IMG/VR virus record: IMGVR_UViG_3300042261_002385
Location: 62,001 to 126,000 of that record
Length of the DNA stretch: 64,000 nt
Strand: one strand, 5' to 3'
Part shown: piece by piece, positions 12,518 through 33,233 of the stretch
Numbering within the stretch: position 1 is the first letter of the stretch
Layout: every line of letters begins with the position of its first letter
Notes under the pieces: model-generated
Databases searched by the model: none
Told to the model about the DNA's origin: nothing
Seen by the model: the letters and a program-made list of their open reading frames with translations, nothing else
Made by a program: the position numbers and the translations under genes

Positions 12518-12603
12518 CGGAGAACAGAGGAATTGAACCCCACACAAATGAACGTGCAACTCGCTTAGCAGGCGGTCCTAATCACCAGATTAGTTTATTC
12601 TCC
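12518..12603 (-). tRNA. tRNA-Ser (GCT), 8/4 fold
   Basis: CGC-CTGCTAA-GCG; CTAATC-TGGT-GATTAG D arm; G73. Confidence 0.82.
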
Positions 12604-12609
12604 ATTTAG

Positions 12610-12693
12610 CGGAAGAAGTAGGTGTCGATCCCAATACCTTTCAGTACCCACAGTTTTCAAGACTGGGTTGCAGGCCGCTGCAATTCATCTTCC
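12610..12693 (-). tRNA. tRNA-Ser (TGA), 8/4 fold
   Basis: CAGT-CTTGAAA-ACTG; TTGCAG-CGGC-CTGCAA D arm; G73. Confidence 0.82.
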
Positions 12694-12699
12694 AATTTG

Positions 12700-12772
12700 T
12701 GGTTCTAGAAGTATTCGAAACCTCACTTGATCGTTCGTAGCGACCTGTCCTGTCCAATTAGACGATAGAACC
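12700..12772 (-). tRNA. tRNA-Arg (ACG)
   Basis: GGTCG-CTACGAA-CGATC arm. Confidence 0.9.
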
Positions 12773-12780
12773 AAATTTAA

Positions 12781-12908
12781 CGGGGATGGTTGGACTCGAA
12801 CCAACGACCTTATAATTTCAAAATATACGAAGTAACTCTTTCAATCAACACTCTTACGAGGTAAAGTTTCAAAAGAGATAGTTTTCTCTACCACTGAGCT
12901 AAATCCCC
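12781..12908 (-). ncRNA. 128-nt tRNA-like RNA with a large structured insertion in the anticodon domain
   Basis: Near-canonical acceptor, D arm (GCTCAGTGGTAGAG) and T arm (GTTGG-TTCGAGT-CCAAC) flank about 55 extra nt. Confidence 0.7.
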
Positions 12909-12919
12909 AATAACATTTG

Positions 12920-12994
12920 TGACTCCGGTGGGACTCGAACCCACATATCCCTGATTAAGAGTCAGGTCCGGAAACCAATTACGGATACGAAGTC
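12920..12994 (-). tRNA. tRNA-Lys (CTT)
   Basis: CCTGA-CTCTTAA-TCAGG arm. Confidence 0.88.
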
Positions 12995-12999
12995 ATTTG

Positions 13000-13087
13000 T
13001 GCACCCAGAAGGACTCGAACCTTCAACGGACTTTCGTCTACCCCTCGCATTAAAAGTGCGATGCTCTACCAATTGAGCCATAGGTGC
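13000..13087 (-). tRNA. tRNA-Lys (TTT) with long variable arm
   Basis: TCGCA-CTTTTAA-TGCGA arm; 20-nt variable region containing GAC-GAAA-GTC. Confidence 0.85.
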
Positions 13088-13100
13088 TTAATTACCTTAG

Positions 13101-13173
13101 TGACCCCGGCGAGAATCGAACTCGCGACCCCCTGGTTAAAAGCCAGGTGCTCTACCTACTAAGCTACGAAGTC
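13101..13173 (-). tRNA. tRNA-Lys (TTT)
   Basis: CCTGG-CTTTTAA-CCAGG arm. Confidence 0.93.
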
Positions 13174-13240: not shown

Positions 13241-13258
13241 TTTCTTTTTTATTTTTAG

Positions 13259-13329
13259 CACGTCGCCTAGGAATTGAACCCAGCCATCGAGGTTTTGGAG
13301 ACCTGACCGACACCTTGTCTGTGCGACGT
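13259..13329 (-). tRNA. tRNA-Trp (CCA), short D arm
   Basis: AGGT-CTCCAAA-ACCT arm, G73. Confidence 0.82.
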
Positions 13330-14387: not shown

Positions 14388-14813
14388 TTATCCTATTTTG
14401 GTTTTGACAACTTCTGATACAATTTTCTTATCAACCGGTAGTTGCGCGAATTCTTTCATTATTTGACCTATCTGTGTTATGCCGTTTGCTATGAGTTCGT
14501 CTACTTTTGATTCAATCTCTAACTTGGTCATTTGTTTTGGTAGATAAGATTCGATTATTGCTAACTCAGCACAAGCTTGAACTATATCTTCACCTTTACC
14601 ATCAATTGGTGCTAATGATTTAATCGTTTCTTTCAAAGATTTTGATGCTTTGATTAAAATTTTTAAAACATCTTCATCGGAAAGATTTTCGACTCCAGTA
14701 TTTTTTTCGGCAGTTTGAATTTCTCCTTTGACTACAGAAAGTAAATTTTTGGTAACAGTATTCTTCATTTTGAATGCTGTCATGTAGTCTTTGTTAATTT
14801 GTTCTTTTATCAT
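14388..14813 (-). CDS. yqeY: GatB/YqeY domain protein
   Basis: IKEQINKDYMTAFK...ELAIIESYLPKQM...IGQIMK. Confidence 0.88.
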   Translation of the reverse strand: MIKEQINKDYMTAFKMKNTVTKNLLSVVKGEIQTAEKNTGVENLSDEDVLKILIKASKSLKETIKSLAPIDGKGEDIVQACAELAIIESYLPKQMTKLEIESKVDELIANGITQIGQIMKEFAQLPVDKKIVSEVVKTKIG

Positions 14814-18175: not shown

Positions 18176-19462
18176 TTACTCTAACCAATTAAGGTTTATT
18201 TGGGTAGTTTCTTTATCATCTTTTATTCCTAAGATTTTTCTGACCTTTCCCTTAGTGTCATTAATTATATTTTTTCTAACTGAGAGTTCTAATAGTAGTA
18301 GGTTCTCTGGAGATAACTCAACATCTTCAAGGTCATGTTTTTCAAGAATTGAAATTCCAATTATTGGATCCTCTTCAAAAATTTCTAATACATTTTTAAC
18401 TATTTTTAATTGTTCTGAAAGTTTTTTTCCCTTCAAATTTCTGATGCTATTCGGAGCGTAACGACCAACTCTTGATAGAAGTTCTAAATCTTCATCAGTT
18501 GGATCACAATCTACGTAACTATTATCTTTAAAAAAGAAATAAAGTTTGTCCCACAATTTAGCTAGCAAGTCTTTTTGCCAAATGTTTCTCATATAAAATA
18601 AAAACTCAAAAGAACTACGTATTTTTCTTAGATTATCATCTACGAATTCTTCATGACCATAAACAAAATCAGCATTATCATCTATTTTTTTATCAGTTTG
18701 AACAGGATTGAGGTGATAAATATTAGACACTTCATTAAAATTAATTTTGATATATTCCTCAATGTCTTTGTCTCTATGTATAGTAAAAAATTGATTCAAT
18801 TTTTCAGAGTATCTCTGATACATATTAAAGTATCTTTCTTTAAATCTAAATTTGAAAGTGTCATTAAATCTAACTCCAATAGTATGTTTTACAAGTTTTA
18901 ACTCAAAGTCGTCTAATTTACAATTTAGTTCATCAGCCTTTTTGACAATTCTTATTGCAGTATGAGCAGGTGTCATTAGATTACAAACTTTTAGTTCACC
19001 GGTGTTTAGAAATTCTTCAAATTCTTGAGTCCAATAAACTTTATCTTCTTCAATTGAATATCCCACCTTTGTTGAATTGATATCAAATGAACGAAGTATC
19101 AAATCAGTGTCTTTTTTATTAGATTTATACTTTACTATATTTAACATTCCATTATTTTCAGAACTAACAATAGTATAGAAGTCTCTATTAATATTTCCAT
19201 ATCTCATACCAGAATAGTCTTCCCAGAAACTTTCTTCTTTTTCTTGGTATTTGAATAAAAGACTTTTATCAGAATCGTCAATTGCTTCAATCACTCCATC
19301 AAATATAAAAATATCTACATCATTAACAACAGCTTTATTACCAGAGACTGATTGCCAAACTAAGTTGGCAATCGATCCACCAGCGATAAATCCACTACTT
19401 GGAAGAGTCCATTTAGACTTAATTACATCAACCGCGTCCCTAACAAGTTTTTCTATATTCAT
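18176..19462 (-). CDS. Pol-beta-superfamily nucleotidyltransferase (CCA-adding/poly(A) polymerase-like head)
   Basis: FIAGGSIAN...NDVDIF and RSFDIN motifs. Confidence 0.6.
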   Translation of the reverse strand: MNIEKLVRDAVDVIKSKWTLPSSGFIAGGSIANLVWQSVSGNKAVVNDVDIFIFDGVIEAIDDSDKSLLFKYQEKEESFWEDYSGMRYGNINRDFYTIVSSENNGMLNIVKYKSNKKDTDLILRSFDINSTKVGYSIEEDKVYWTQEFEEFLNTGELKVCNLMTPAHTAIRIVKKADELNCKLDDFELKLVKHTIGVRFNDTFKFRFKERYFNMYQRYSEKLNQFFTIHRDKDIEEYIKINFNEVSNIYHLNPVQTDKKIDDNADFVYGHEEFVDDNLRKIRSSFEFLFYMRNIWQKDLLAKLWDKLYFFFKDNSYVDCDPTDEDLELLSRVGRYAPNSIRNLKGKKLSEQLKIVKNVLEIFEEDPIIGISILEKHDLEDVELSPENLLLLELSVRKNIINDTKGKVRKILGIKDDKETTQINLNWLE

Positions 19463-32156: not shown

Positions 32157-33233
32157 ATGATACAAACAATCGGAAACCCAGAATTAGAGTTCTTATTTGA
32201 GGAGGACTCTTTCAGAACGAAGAAAAAATCTCAAAAAGAGGTAGAACTTTCCAAACTCTACGAATCAACATTTGTTGAAATGCCACAAGTTGGTCAAATC
32301 ATCAATGCCACCTTTGCTGGTGAAACAAAAAACAGCTTCATTTTCACAAAACCAGGATATAAAGACGATATCCGAGTTGACAATAGACTTTCTGAAGCTA
32401 AATATCTTAAAAACTCACAAGTTGGAGACACAGTTGATGTTCTTATCGTTGATATTAATCACGATAATTTTTACATCAAAGGAAGTATTTCTACACTTTA
32501 TGAAAATAGAGCACACCAGACTCTTAAATCTCTTAAAGAAGGAGAATCTGTTATTGCCCACATCAAATCATTGAATCCAGCTGGATATGATGTTGAATTG
32601 ACACACGGAGGTGTTACACTTCCAGGATTTATGCCAAACACACTAGCTGGTATCAATAAACTCTACGACCCTAACTCAATCGTTGGTAGCACTTTTGAAG
32701 TGATGATAGAGTCATATGCTGAACAAGAAGGAACTTACATCGTCAGTAGAAGAAAATATCTACAAACGTTGATTCCTAAAGCAATCAAAGAACTGAATTT
32801 TGAACTGACTTACAGAGGTCACGTTACAGGAACTACACCATTCGGAGTATTTGTTGAGTTTAATGAGTGTCTTACAGGTATGATTCATAAAGCAAATGTT
32901 CATCCTGAGTGGCAGGAAAGATTAAGTGATATCAAACCAGGTTTTGAAATCGAGTTCTATATCAAAGAGATTGTCAAAGAAAAGATTATTCTTACGCAAA
33001 TTCTTAGAGAAACTCTTTGGGATAACATCAAAAATGGTCAAACACTTAAAGGTGTCGTTAAAGATGTTAAACAATTCGGAACTCTTGTAAGTCTTGACGA
33101 TGAAACTGTAGGTCTGATTCACACTTCTGAAATGGAGAAACTCAAAATGAGATTTCAACCAGAACAAGAAGTAAAAGTGAAAGTTCTATCAGTAGACAGA
33201 GCTTCTCGAAAAATTTTCCTCACTGTAGGATAA
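32157..33233 (+). CDS. rpsA: Ribosomal protein bS1-like multi-S1-domain protein
   Basis: About four S1 repeats, e.g. GHVTGTTPFGVFVEF..GMIH and GVVKDVKQFGTLV..GLIHTSE..VKVLSVD. Confidence 0.85.
   Translation: MIQTIGNPELEFLFEEDSFRTKKKSQKEVELSKLYESTFVEMPQVGQIINATFAGETKNSFIFTKPGYKDDIRVDNRLSEAKYLKNSQVGDTVDVLIVDINHDNFYIKGSISTLYENRAHQTLKSLKEGESVIAHIKSLNPAGYDVELTHGGVTLPGFMPNTLAGINKLYDPNSIVGSTFEVMIESYAEQEGTYIVSRRKYLQTLIPKAIKELNFELTYRGHVTGTTPFGVFVEFNECLTGMIHKANVHPEWQERLSDIKPGFEIEFYIKEIVKEKIILTQILRETLWDNIKNGQTLKGVVKDVKQFGTLVSLDDETVGLIHTSEMEKLKMRFQPEQEVKVKVLSVDRASRKIFLTVG

What the first reader, a model, noticed from the sequence alone, without database searches (positions are those of the whole stretch)
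12781..12908. 128-nt tRNA mimic with an expanded anticodon domain
Acceptor, D and T arms enclose a long imperfect helix (CTCTTTT/GAAAGAG capped by CTC-GTAA-GAG) and a weak TATAT-TTTGAAA-TTATA hairpin; the discriminator is G73. The insert is too short for a group I intron. A tRNA elbow joined to a long bulged stem resembles bacterial Y RNAs (YrlA, Ro60 partners), here with an open acceptor end; this resemblance is inference only. Alternatives are an insertion-bearing tRNA-Ser(TGA) or a decoy.
Basis: partly seen in the sequence, partly recalled or inferred. Interest (0 to 1): 0.7.

Follow-up and report, generated by a model that had tools for sequence, protein, structure and literature searches.

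The report
Phage Y RNA built into a tRNA
This 128-nt gene in a giant freshwater phage's tRNA cluster is a complete tRNA-shaped RNA that carries the Ro60-binding stem of a bacterial Y RNA, so it is most likely the partner of the phage's own Ro60 protein and a rearranged relative of the known YrlA RNAs.

Summary
On the minus strand, 12908..12781, an acceptor stem, D arm, T arm and a 5-bp/7-nt anticodon-type hairpin (UGA) enclose a 56-nt bulged hairpin.

- The 436-kb phage encodes a Ro60/TROVE+vWA protein, 112 kb away and outside the window.
- About 350 nt upstream of that gene lies a small Y RNA whose stem is nearly the same as the 56-nt insert. The 11-mer GAGTTACTTCG occurs only at these two places in the genome.
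- Of 117 viral loci fetched only by the RNA motif GTTACTT plus a T arm, 57 hold a Ro60 gene, at a median distance of 102 nt.
- Ro60 is present in 14 of 20 contigs with this insert class, and in 0 of 12 with other insert classes.
- After circular permutation the element aligns end to end with a profile of 89 canonical YrlA-type RNAs (55 bits; best shuffle 3 bits).

Unlike YrlA, the acceptor end is open, the Ro stem is capped, and a full anticodon arm is kept.

Splicing as an intron is the main rival. I found no spliced read and no RtcB or EndA gene, but the RNA data are thin. I rate it a new variant of a known kind.

The parts
12781..12908 (-). Whole element, 128 nt: a tRNA-shaped Y RNA-like gene. 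It lies 10 nt downstream of tRNA-Lys(CUU) (12919-12994) and 8 nt upstream of tRNA-Arg(ACG) (12699-12772). CCA is not encoded.
   Evidence: homologues at the same place in the cluster; structure counts
12902..12908 (-). Acceptor stem, 5' strand (GGGGAUU). It pairs with 12782-12788.
   Evidence: two of seven pairs change on both sides among relatives. The 7-66 pair is U.C only in this window.
12886..12899 (-). D arm: GCUC-AGUGGUA-GAG (A14, G18, G19, A21 present). G10 closes with the C at 12829, on the far side of the insert.
12830..12885 (-). 56-nt insert, the Ro60-binding Y RNA module. It comprises a variable A/U-rich 5' tail, the outer helix, an AAC loop, the inner helix with one bulged U and a constant U.U, the capped hairpin, and the invariant tail UUACUU.
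12869..12877 (-). Outer helix of the module, 5' strand CUCUUUUGA. It pairs with 12836-12844 (UUGAAAGAG).
   Evidence: across 48 family members the helix changes sequence but stays paired (mean longest helix 6.85 nt vs 5.94 +/- 0.17 when partners are permuted; 0 of 200 permutations reach it)
12845..12865 (-). Inner part of the module: UUUAC, CUC-GUAA-GAG cap, bulged U, GUUGA. The GUGUUGAUUG stretch lines up with the GGUG(Y)CGUAGA motif of relatives, which resembles the published Rsr-binding motif GNCGAAN0-1G.
   Evidence: motif from PMC4201824
12830..12836 (-). GUUACUU: the invariant junction motif of the whole family. The G closes the outer helix.
   Evidence: (invariant in 48 of 48)
12811..12827 (-). 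Anticodon-type arm UAUAU-UUUGAAA-UUAUA. The anticodon-position triplet UGA is at 12818-12820.
   Evidence: three of five stem pairs change on both sides, while UUGAA in the loop stays constant
12789..12810 (-). Variable loop AGGUC and T arm GUUGG-UUCGAGU-CCAAC
12781..12788 (-). Acceptor stem 3' strand CAUCCCC plus discriminator G (A in three relatives)

Best explanation
The element is a phage Y RNA of the YrlA kind in a rearranged form. It is a complete, L-shaped tRNA body with an open acceptor stem, a D arm, an anticodon-type arm and a T arm. A 56-nt capped, bulged hairpin projects from between the D stem and the anticodon stem.

That hairpin is the Ro60-binding stem found in the Y RNAs next to Ro60 genes.

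**Shown:**
- the anatomy;
- the homology of the insert to Ro60-linked Y RNA stems;
- the presence of a phage Ro60 gene;
- purifying selection on both the tRNA stems and the module.

**Inferred mechanism:**
- The RNA is transcribed with the tRNA cluster.
- RNase P and the 3' processing enzymes cut it out like its neighbours, and it is CCA-tailed.
- It stays unspliced, and its module binds the phage Ro60.
- As in other Ro60/Y RNA particles, the RNA then gates Ro60 or tethers it to a partner. Here the partner would be something that recognises an authentic tRNA shape (a tRNA-processing, charging, repair or cleaving enzyme) or the host PNPase.
- This would put Ro60-based RNA surveillance at the service of a phage that brings more than 30 tRNAs of its own.
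For: 1. **Ro60 gene.** The genome has a 484-aa TROVE+vWA protein at G000:C1:186841-188295(-). It is closest to phage phiLo Ro60, then to Ro60 and Rsr.
2. **Paralogous stem.** About 350 nt upstream of that gene, on the same strand, a roughly 70-nt Y RNA has the stem CCAG-U-AGUGAG-UUAGAGAG-UUACUUCG / CACUCUUUGAC-AA-UUUACU-CUGG. It matches the insert part for part. GAGTTACTTCG occurs only at these two sites in 436 kb. The same upstream Y RNA is present in two relatives.
3. **Linkage to Ro60.**
   - 57 of 117 viral loci fetched by the RNA motif alone carry a Ro60 ORF, at a median of 102 nt, 56 of them on the same strand.
   - Ro60 is present in 14 of 20 contigs with this insert class and in 0 of 12 with other classes.
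   - In bacteria the same open-acceptor form lies within 1.5 kb of a Ro60 gene in 8 of 8 cases, for example in Chryseobacterium, Soonwooa and Chitinophaga.
4. **Collinear with YrlA when permuted.** The permuted element matches a profile of 89 canonical-topology RNAs over 120 of 128 nt (55.4 bits, E = 4.5e-17). In native order it matches only in two pieces, and the best shuffle scores 2.9 bits. The order of the Rfam YrlA consensus explains this.
5. **Selection.** The module is almost invariant while the tRNA stems co-vary, as expected for a protein-binding site.
6. **Redundancy.** A normal class II tRNA-Ser(UGA) sits two genes away at 12611-12693. Phages whose module-bearing copies carry Asn or Cys loops also have ordinary Asn and Cys tRNAs. 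Next to Ro60 in flavobacteria, the anticodon triplet drifts between UUU and AUU.
7. **RNA data.** One metatranscriptome contig covers 12782-12888 without a gap, and no run shows a joint that skips the insert.
8. **Precedent.** Ro60/Y RNA pairs are known in phages (PMC4201824; PMC12135203).
Against: - Binding to Ro60 has not been tested. The complex prediction was not run for RNA.
- The putative Rsr-binding motif is diverged here: GUUGAUUG against GNCGAAN0-1G.
- The Ro60 gene is 112 kb away, not adjacent.
- Removing the insert leaves a flawless cloverleaf, with an anticodon loop whose UUGAA is conserved while its stem co-varies. That looks like selection on a decoding or anticodon-recognised function.
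- The same module sits at different tRNA positions (24/25 here; 28/29 or 29/30 in the Asn, Lys and Cys versions). Both of these points are what an intron would show.
- The RNA evidence is one low-depth contig from a relative, in a library that could hold DNA.
Confidence: 0.7

Rival explanations
1. It is an intron-bearing tRNA gene. The 56-nt module is cut out and the halves are joined, giving a 72-nt class I tRNA with anticodon UGA that works in translation. The excised hairpin might itself be a mini Y RNA.
For: - Deleting 12885-12830 restores the D-stem pair G10-C25 and a perfect cloverleaf.
- The anticodon stem co-varies and the loop is conserved.
- The same module interrupts different tRNA bodies at 24/25, 28/29 and 29/30, each time restoring a canonical anticodon arm (Asn GUU, Lys UUU, Cys GCA, Arg CCU).
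- An insert at 24/25 lies where, from general knowledge of ribosome structure, 23S helix 69 contacts the tRNA. The unspliced form could therefore hardly decode.
Against: - The genome has no RtcB, no splicing endonuclease and no T4 Rnl1. It has only a 212-aa minimal ligase-like protein.
- No group I or other ribozyme family matches the insert, and I could draw no bulge-helix-bulge motif.
- The exon-intron borders are not conserved.
- No joint skipping the insert appears in eight RNA or RNA-labelled runs, and one unspliced contig is seen.
- The anticodon is redundant with ordinary tRNAs.
- No uninterrupted version of this tRNA exists in 2.9 million viral contigs.
- In canonical YrlA the Ro stem and the tRNA-like domain work as one molecule (PMC4201824).
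Confidence: 0.15
2. It is a tRNA-shaped decoy or sensor in the conflict over tRNAs. The authentic anticodon arm attracts a host anticodon nuclease or another tRNA-targeting defence protein, and the attached Ro60 (with PNPase or a repair enzyme) blocks it, reports the attack or repairs the damage. This is a specific version of the main explanation rather than an alternative to the anatomy.
For: - The loops carried by module-bearing copies are authentic anticodon loops. Several, such as Asn GUU and Lys UUU, are types known from the literature as targets of anticodon nucleases (general knowledge; PMC3014915 for PrrC/tRNA-Lys).
- Ro60/TROVE is placed among phage RNA-repair systems in PMC7824862.
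- RlaP, an RNA-repair nucleotidyltransferase, lies beside the Chryseobacterium copy.
Against: - No nuclease specific for tRNA-Ser(UGA) is known to me.
- No host is known for this phage.
- Nothing in the window tests the idea.
Confidence: 0.1
3. It is a dead tRNA gene, a pseudogene disrupted by a stray insertion, as similar genes were labelled in T4-like phages.
For: - Standard tRNA finders skip it or score it low.
- KVP40 and Aeh1 genes with other inserts are annotated as pseudo-tRNAs (PMC1524935).
- The window copy has one acceptor mismatch.
Against: - Seven diverged copies keep every helix through compensatory changes and keep the insert almost letter for letter.
- The position in the cluster is conserved.
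- The insert family is linked to Ro60 genes far beyond chance.
Confidence: 0.05

Closest known systems
YrlA, bacterial and phage Y RNA with a tRNA-like domain (Rfam RF02553; Chen et al. 2014, PMC4201824)
   Same: - A Ro60-linked stem is joined to a D arm, a T arm and an acceptor stem that keep the conserved tRNA nucleotides.
- The junction motif and stem are shared with YrlA-type RNAs that lie beside Ro60 genes.
- It is collinear with them after circular permutation.
- It co-occurs with a Ro60 gene.
   Different: - The termini lie in the acceptor stem, not in the Ro stem.
- The Ro stem is closed by a GUAA-capped hairpin.
- A full 5-bp/7-nt anticodon arm is present; YrlA has none.
- The gene sits in a tRNA cluster 112 kb from the Ro60 gene, not beside it.
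- The Rfam model does not detect it.
Thermus phage phiLo Ro60 with Yrl1/Yrl2 (PMC12135203; PDB 9KOP, 9L5Y)
   Same: - A phage encodes its own Ro60 and its own Y RNAs upstream of the gene.
- The protein here is the closest solved relative of that one.
- This phage also has two small Y RNAs upstream of its Ro60 gene.
   Different: Yrl1 and Yrl2 are described as plain stem-bulge-stem Y RNAs. No tRNA-embedded form in a tRNA cluster is reported there.
Deinococcus radiodurans Yrn1
   Same: It is a Y RNA with partial tRNA features, including an anticodon-like arm and a T arm (PMC4201824).
   Different: - In Yrn1 the Ro stem takes the place of the acceptor stem.
- Its D arm is incomplete and its loop has 6 nt.
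- Here all four tRNA arms are intact and the Ro stem is an extra, fifth arm.
Intron-containing tRNA genes (bacterial group I; archaeal bulge-helix-bulge)
   Same: An intervening sequence whose removal restores the cloverleaf. Archaeal introns also occur at positions such as 25/26 and 29/30 (general knowledge; PMC4090602).
   Different: - At 56 nt it is too small for group I, and no Rfam intron family matches it.
- There is no bulge-helix-bulge motif and no endonuclease or RtcB gene.
- The insert is a Ro60-linked module.
Permuted (two-piece) tmRNA genes and the phage T4 stable RNAs C and D
   Same: - Permuted tmRNA genes are, from general knowledge, a precedent for a tRNA-like RNA family that exists in two circularly permuted gene orders.
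- T4 rnaC and rnaD are stable, non-tRNA RNAs encoded inside a phage tRNA cluster, with unknown function (PMC3014915).
   Different: - tmRNA has no link to Ro60.
- T4 rnaC and rnaD showed no convincing similarity to this module.

Membership tests
YrlA / bacterial Y RNA (RF02553) | Encoded in a genome that has a Ro60 (TROVE) protein | tested here: met
   484-aa TROVE+vWA protein at G000:C1:186841-188295(-); best PDB match is phage phiLo Ro60, E = 2e-24
YrlA / bacterial Y RNA (RF02553) | Gene lies next to the Ro60 gene on the same strand (search criterion of Chen et al. 2014) | tested here: not met
   The element is at G000:C1:74781-74908, 112 kb from the Ro60 gene. Both are on the minus strand. 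Two other small Y RNAs occupy the adjacent position.
YrlA / bacterial Y RNA (RF02553) | Stem carrying the Rsr-binding motif GNCGAAN0-1G | tested here: inconclusive
   The homologous stretch reads GUUGAUUG, with two positions off. Relatives read G(U/C)CGUAG or GCGAAG. The stem as a whole matches the Ro60-adjacent Y RNA of the same genome.
YrlA / bacterial Y RNA (RF02553) | tRNA-like domain with D arm, T arm, acceptor stem and the conserved tertiary nucleotides | tested here: met
   U8, A14, G15-C48, G18, G19, A21 and the T loop UUCGAGU are all present. The stems are supported by compensatory changes.
YrlA / bacterial Y RNA (RF02553) | 5' and 3' ends form the Ro stem; acceptor stem closed by a loop; no anticodon arm | tested here: not met
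   Here the acceptor stem is open, the Ro stem is capped and an anticodon arm is present. The consensus order of YrlA is seen. Only the circular permutation aligns in one piece.
YrlA / bacterial Y RNA (RF02553) | Scores at or above the Rfam gathering threshold (69 bits) | tested here: not met
   No YrlA match on 12781-12908, even at E <= 10
YrlA / bacterial Y RNA (RF02553) | Binds Ro60/Rsr | not testable with these tools
   The complex prediction was not folded for RNA. This needs EMSA or RIP.
tRNA (RF00005) | Continuous cloverleaf of about 72-95 nt that reaches the model's threshold | tested here: not met
   128 nt; only positions 10-63 of the model match, at 23.9 bits against 29; ARAGORN with default settings is silent
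tRNA (RF00005) | All four arms, a 7-nt anticodon loop with U33 and a purine at 37, and a discriminator base | tested here: met
   Met once the 56-nt insert is set aside
tRNA (RF00005) | Aminoacylated and used in decoding | not testable with these tools
   The class I body with a UGA anticodon lacks the long arm that bacterial SerRS uses (general knowledge). The discriminator varies between G and A among relatives.
Group I intron in a tRNA gene | Conserved catalytic core of roughly 200 nt or more, inserted in the anticodon loop | tested here: not met
   The insert is 56 nt and lies at 24/25. No intron family matches at E <= 10.
Archaeal-type spliced tRNA intron | Bulge-helix-bulge motif at the splice sites, with a splicing endonuclease and RtcB | tested here: not met
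   No such pairing can be drawn between the insert start and the 3' exon (sequence). PF01974 and PF01139 are absent from the genome.

The most novel reading that the evidence does not exclude
The Ro60-binding module is a true intron of a new kind. Phage (and some bacterial) tRNA precursors carry a Y RNA inside the D/anticodon junction, and Ro60 marks or chaperones the precursor. The module is then excised and the halves are ligated. One gene would thus yield both a working tRNA and a mini Y RNA, which would be the first protein-dependent tRNA splicing pathway outside archaea and eukaryotes. It would also explain the old puzzle of why Ro60, Y RNAs and the tRNA-splicing ligase RtcB travel together in bacterial operons.
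Probability: 0.1. Interest if true: 0.9.

Novelty: new variant of a known kind. Interest (0 to 1): 0.62.

Why it matters
Y RNAs with a tRNA-like domain are known, but what that domain is for is still open. In this form the domain is a whole tRNA, with a free acceptor end and a real anticodon arm, produced from a tRNA operon. Three questions become directly testable:
- whether a Y RNA can be CCA-tailed, charged or recognised by anticodon-specific proteins;
- what Ro60 is tethered to;
- whether huge phages use Ro60 to look after, or defend, their own large tRNA sets.

The family also links ordinary tRNAs to YrlA. A tRNA with an inserted Ro stem, followed by circular permutation and loss of the anticodon hairpin, would give YrlA. 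I found the same open-acceptor form beside Ro60 genes in Bacteroidota. The YrlA model gave no match at three of the four copies I scanned and only sub-threshold matches overlapping the fourth, so Y RNA partners may be missing from current catalogues for many Ro60-bearing genomes.

Tried and rejected
- **ARAGORN intron mode.** It calls the element 'tRNA-Glu(UUC), 44-nt intron'. I rejected this because the stem it needs lies in the 5' tail, which varies in length and sequence among relatives.
- **Self-cleaving or self-splicing ribozyme.** No Rfam family matches at E <= 10, and I could fit no hammerhead, hairpin or K-turn core by eye.
- **Pairing of the insert's CUUUACC or the UUACU tail with the D loop (GGUAG).** Not supported. 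Relatives with GGUUAG or GGCAG D loops keep the same tail.
- **GUAA cap pairing with UUAC.** Rejected, because the cap varies (ACAA, AUAA, GUGA, GAAA) while UUAC is fixed.
- **RNAalifold on the 48-sequence MAFFT alignment.** It gave no structure because the alignment was out of register. I replaced it with a partner-permutation test.
- **Uninterrupted counterpart of this tRNA.** Searched for in viral contigs; none found.
- **Cultured-phage relatives.** None found for this insert class.
- **Closest tRNA body in the own genome.** No close paralogue.
- **T4 rnaC and rnaD.** Compared; no convincing relation.
- **RNA runs.** X15-X18 gave no coverage of the element. X25-X27 are probably DNA, and X41 gave one unspliced contig.
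- **Ro60 + RNA complex prediction.** Not folded, so it is not evidence either way.
- **Literature.** Searches for short introns in phage tRNA genes found nothing.

Full report
**1. What is there**

The window is part of a 436-kb, 31.5% G+C virus record from fresh water. On its minus strand lie several tRNA clusters.

ARAGORN finds 22 tRNA genes in the window but leaves a 146-nt gap between tRNA-Lys(CUU) (12919-12994) and tRNA-Arg(ACG) (12699-12772). The finding fills that gap, leaving spacers of 10 and 8 nt. Read 5' to 3' from 12908 to 12781, the sequence has:
- a 7-bp acceptor stem with one U.C mismatch;
- U8 A9 and a canonical D arm;
- a 56-nt insert (12885-12830);
- C-G, then a 5-bp/7-nt hairpin with loop UUUGAAA;
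- the class I variable loop AGGUC;
- a canonical T arm and discriminator G.

The Rfam tRNA model sees only part of it (23.9 bits), and the Rfam YrlA model does not see it at all. Folding energy is not exceptional.

**2. It is conserved and its helices are under selection**

A pattern scan for a D arm and a T arm separated by an over-long spacer found six close homologues in other large viral contigs. They sit at the same place in the cluster, between Lys or Trp and Arg(ACG)-Ser(UGA).

On the seven-sequence alignment the proposed structure behaves as follows:
- 95.8% of cells are paired, against 43-54% when partners are slid.
- Seven pairs show compensatory double changes: acceptor 2, anticodon stem 3, T stem 2.
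- No shuffle out of 500 reaches the observed covariation score.
- The 56-nt insert is almost invariant in sequence, apart from its A/U-rich 5' tail and its cap loop.

This is the pattern expected for a structured tRNA body that carries a sequence-specific binding site.

**3. First reading: an intron**

Deleting the insert restores the G10-C25 pair and a perfect 72-nt cloverleaf with anticodon UGA.

The same insert family, recognised by its invariant 3' end GUUACUU, interrupts other tRNA bodies at 28/29 or 29/30. These carry Asn GUU, Lys UUU, Cys GCA and Arg CCU loops.

I found no paper describing such inserts. Related-looking genes in KVP40 and Aeh1 are simply annotated as pseudo-tRNAs. The genome lacks RtcB, a splicing endonuclease and T4 Rnl1. 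It has only a 212-aa ligase-like protein.

**4. The turn: the insert is a Y RNA stem**

A scan of cellular genomes for the same architecture found it in Chryseobacterium, Soonwooa, Chitinophaga, Zavarzinella, Streptomyces and others. In the four loci I examined, the neighbouring ORF is a TROVE/Ro60 protein. One locus also has the RNA-repair nucleotidyltransferase RlaP.

The Rfam YrlA model gives sub-threshold matches in the Chitinophaga, Zavarzinella, Streptomyces and spirochaete loci, and none in the Chryseobacterium and Soonwooa loci. Its consensus shows the order Ro-stem 5' strand, T arm, closed acceptor hairpin, D arm, Ro-stem 3' strand. GUUACUU falls just before the T arm.

The phage genome itself then proved to encode a Ro60:
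- It is 484 aa, with TROVE and vWA domains.
- Its closest solved relative is the Ro60 of Thermus phage phiLo (E = 2e-24), followed by human and Xenopus Ro60 and Deinococcus Rsr.
- About 350 nt upstream of it, on the same strand, lies a small Y RNA whose stem matches the insert segment by segment. Its far end is open where the insert has a GUAA cap.
- The 11-mer GAGTTACTTCG occurs at just these two places in the genome. A variant, GAGATACTTCG, marks a second Y RNA beside the first.
- Two relatives have the same upstream Y RNA.

**5. How strong is the link to Ro60?**

- I built a Ro60 profile from five of these proteins. With it, 57 of the 117 viral loci retrieved purely by 'GTTACTT, 17-30 nt, T-arm' contain a Ro60 ORF. 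The median distance is 102 nt, and 56 of the 57 are on the same strand.
- At whole-contig level, Ro60 is present in 14 of 20 contigs with this insert class. Most of the six without it are fragments. It is present in 0 of 12 mostly complete large phages with other insert classes.
- The outer helix of the module changes sequence across 48 members but stays paired (6.85 against 5.94 +/- 0.17 in permuted controls).
- A census gave 69 canonical-order and 22 open-acceptor copies in viral loci. In cellular loci it gave 21 canonical and 8 open-acceptor copies, and all eight open-acceptor copies lie within 1.5 kb of a Ro60 gene.

**6. Relation to YrlA**

I built a profile from 89 canonical-order RNAs. 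It aligns the circularly permuted element over 120 of its 128 nt (55.4 bits, E = 4.5e-17). The native order matches only as two separate pieces, and 500 shuffles reach at most 2.9 bits.

The element is therefore a YrlA-type RNA with three differences. Its ends lie in the acceptor stem, its Ro stem is capped, and it has an extra anticodon arm between GUUACUU-CG and the variable loop.

According to Chen et al.:
- YrlA RNAs occur near Ro60 in 254 bacteria and 22 phages.
- They carry a GNCGAAN0-1G motif thought to bind Rsr.
- They are modified by tRNA enzymes.
- In M. smegmatis, YrlA is even cut by RNase P and CCA-tailed.

Phage Ro60 with phage Y RNAs and host PNPase has been reconstituted for phiLo. 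TROVE proteins have been noted in some jumbo phages. I found no description of the open-acceptor, complete-tRNA form, although subscription journals were not searchable.

**7. Spliced or not?**

Against splicing:
- No machinery for it is encoded in the genome.
- The borders of the insert are not conserved.
- The anticodon is redundant. A class II tRNA-Ser(UGA) lies at 12611-12693, and ordinary Asn and Cys tRNAs accompany the module-bearing Asn and Cys copies.
- The anticodon triplet drifts in the Ro60-adjacent flavobacterial copies.
- No uninterrupted version of this tRNA exists in the viral collection.
- One metatranscriptome contig runs unspliced through 12782-12888, and no run shows a joint that skips the insert.

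For splicing:
- The cloverleaf is perfect after removal.
- The anticodon loop is conserved.
- The insertion point varies between tRNA bodies.

The RNA data are too thin to settle the matter. I put the unspliced Y RNA reading at about 0.7 and splicing at about 0.15.

**8. Most likely working**

- *Shown:* the anatomy, the homology, the Ro60 gene and the selection pattern.
- *Inferred:* the RNA is co-transcribed with the tRNA cluster, and its ends are made by RNase P and 3' processing. It is CCA-tailed, since CCA is not encoded.
- *Inferred:* the module binds the phage Ro60.
- *Inferred:* the tRNA body acts as the effector end. It would tether Ro60, and possibly PNPase, to something that recognises a real tRNA, or it would gate Ro60.
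- *Not determined:* the amino-acid identity. The body is class I with a UGA anticodon, and the discriminator is G or A among relatives.

**9. Verdict**

- The element fails several formal YrlA membership criteria (topology, adjacency to the Ro60 gene, model score), yet it is clearly homologous and probably works like YrlA.
- It is a new variant of a known kind.

Noticed in passing
outside the window: G000:C1:188620-188690(-) and about 188500-188591(-); Ro60 gene at G000:C1:186841-188295(-): Two small Y RNA-like elements lie upstream of the phage Ro60 gene. The first is a plain stem-loop Y RNA with the same stem as the insert. The second carries AUAGCGAUAGUUUGAGAUACUUCG. Rfam detects neither.
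   Followed up: partly
loci L048 (KVP40 'tRNA-Pseudo-3'), L010 (Aeh1), L070 (CBB), L025, L075, L031, L021, L050, L080, L009 and others: Phage tRNA genes carry other classes of 39-68-nt inserts on the 5' side of the anticodon stem or in the anticodon loop. One class is a hairpin plus a ..CAGCAA.. tail; another begins GTATTTACG. One insert lies in a TCA (opal-suppressor type) tRNA. Removing each insert gives a perfect cloverleaf. None of 12 such genomes has a Ro60 gene. What these inserts are is unexplained.
   Followed up: partly
window 12999-13087 (-): A tRNA-Lys(UUU) of 89 nt has a roughly 16-nt extra arm in the variable region. This is unusual for a Lys tRNA. A normal tRNA-Lys(UUU) lies next to it at 13100-13173.
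   Followed up: no
window 12518-12604, 12611-12693, 13258-13329 (-): ARAGORN with default settings misses three more tRNA genes: Ser(GCU), Ser(UGA) and Trp(CCA). Rfam finds them through the tRNA-Sec model, and ARAGORN finds them at a lowered threshold. With them the genome codes tRNAs for 19 amino acids. No tRNA-Ala was found.
   Followed up: partly
outside the window: G000:C1:37118-37204 (-): ARAGORN reports an 87-nt tRNA with a four-base anticodon (agta) and no assigned amino acid.
   Followed up: no
window 14388-14813 (-), 18176-19462 (-), 32157-33233 (+): Three RNA-related proteins lie near the cluster: a YqeY-like protein; a 428-aa protein with a weak nucleotidyltransferase match, possibly a CCA-adding enzyme; and a 358-aa protein with S1 RNA-binding domains. 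Any of these could work with the tRNAs or the Ro60 particle.
   Followed up: no
loci L215, L040, L117, L030 (loop CUAUGGA); L140 10180-10244 region (8-nt loop AUUAGGAA); L226/L230 (loops UUAUUAA, CUAUUAA): Several open-acceptor Y RNAs have odd anticodon-type loops, with A at position 34 or with eight nucleotides. This suggests that in some lineages the loop no longer has to decode.
   Followed up: no
outside the window: G000:C1:161397-162035 (-), locus L099 1432-2070: A 212-aa minimal ATP-dependent ligase-like protein (DNA_ligase_A_M / RNA_ligase domains) lies beside a lone tRNA-Cys gene. It is the only RNA-ligase candidate found in the genome.
   Followed up: partly
L225 4697-5446 and 6599-7975 (Chryseobacterium kwangjuense): A bacterial locus has RlaP (an RNA-repair nucleotidyltransferase), an unknown 211-aa ORF, an open-acceptor tRNA-shaped Y RNA and Ro60 in a row. 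It could serve as a culturable system for testing this RNA form.
   Followed up: partly
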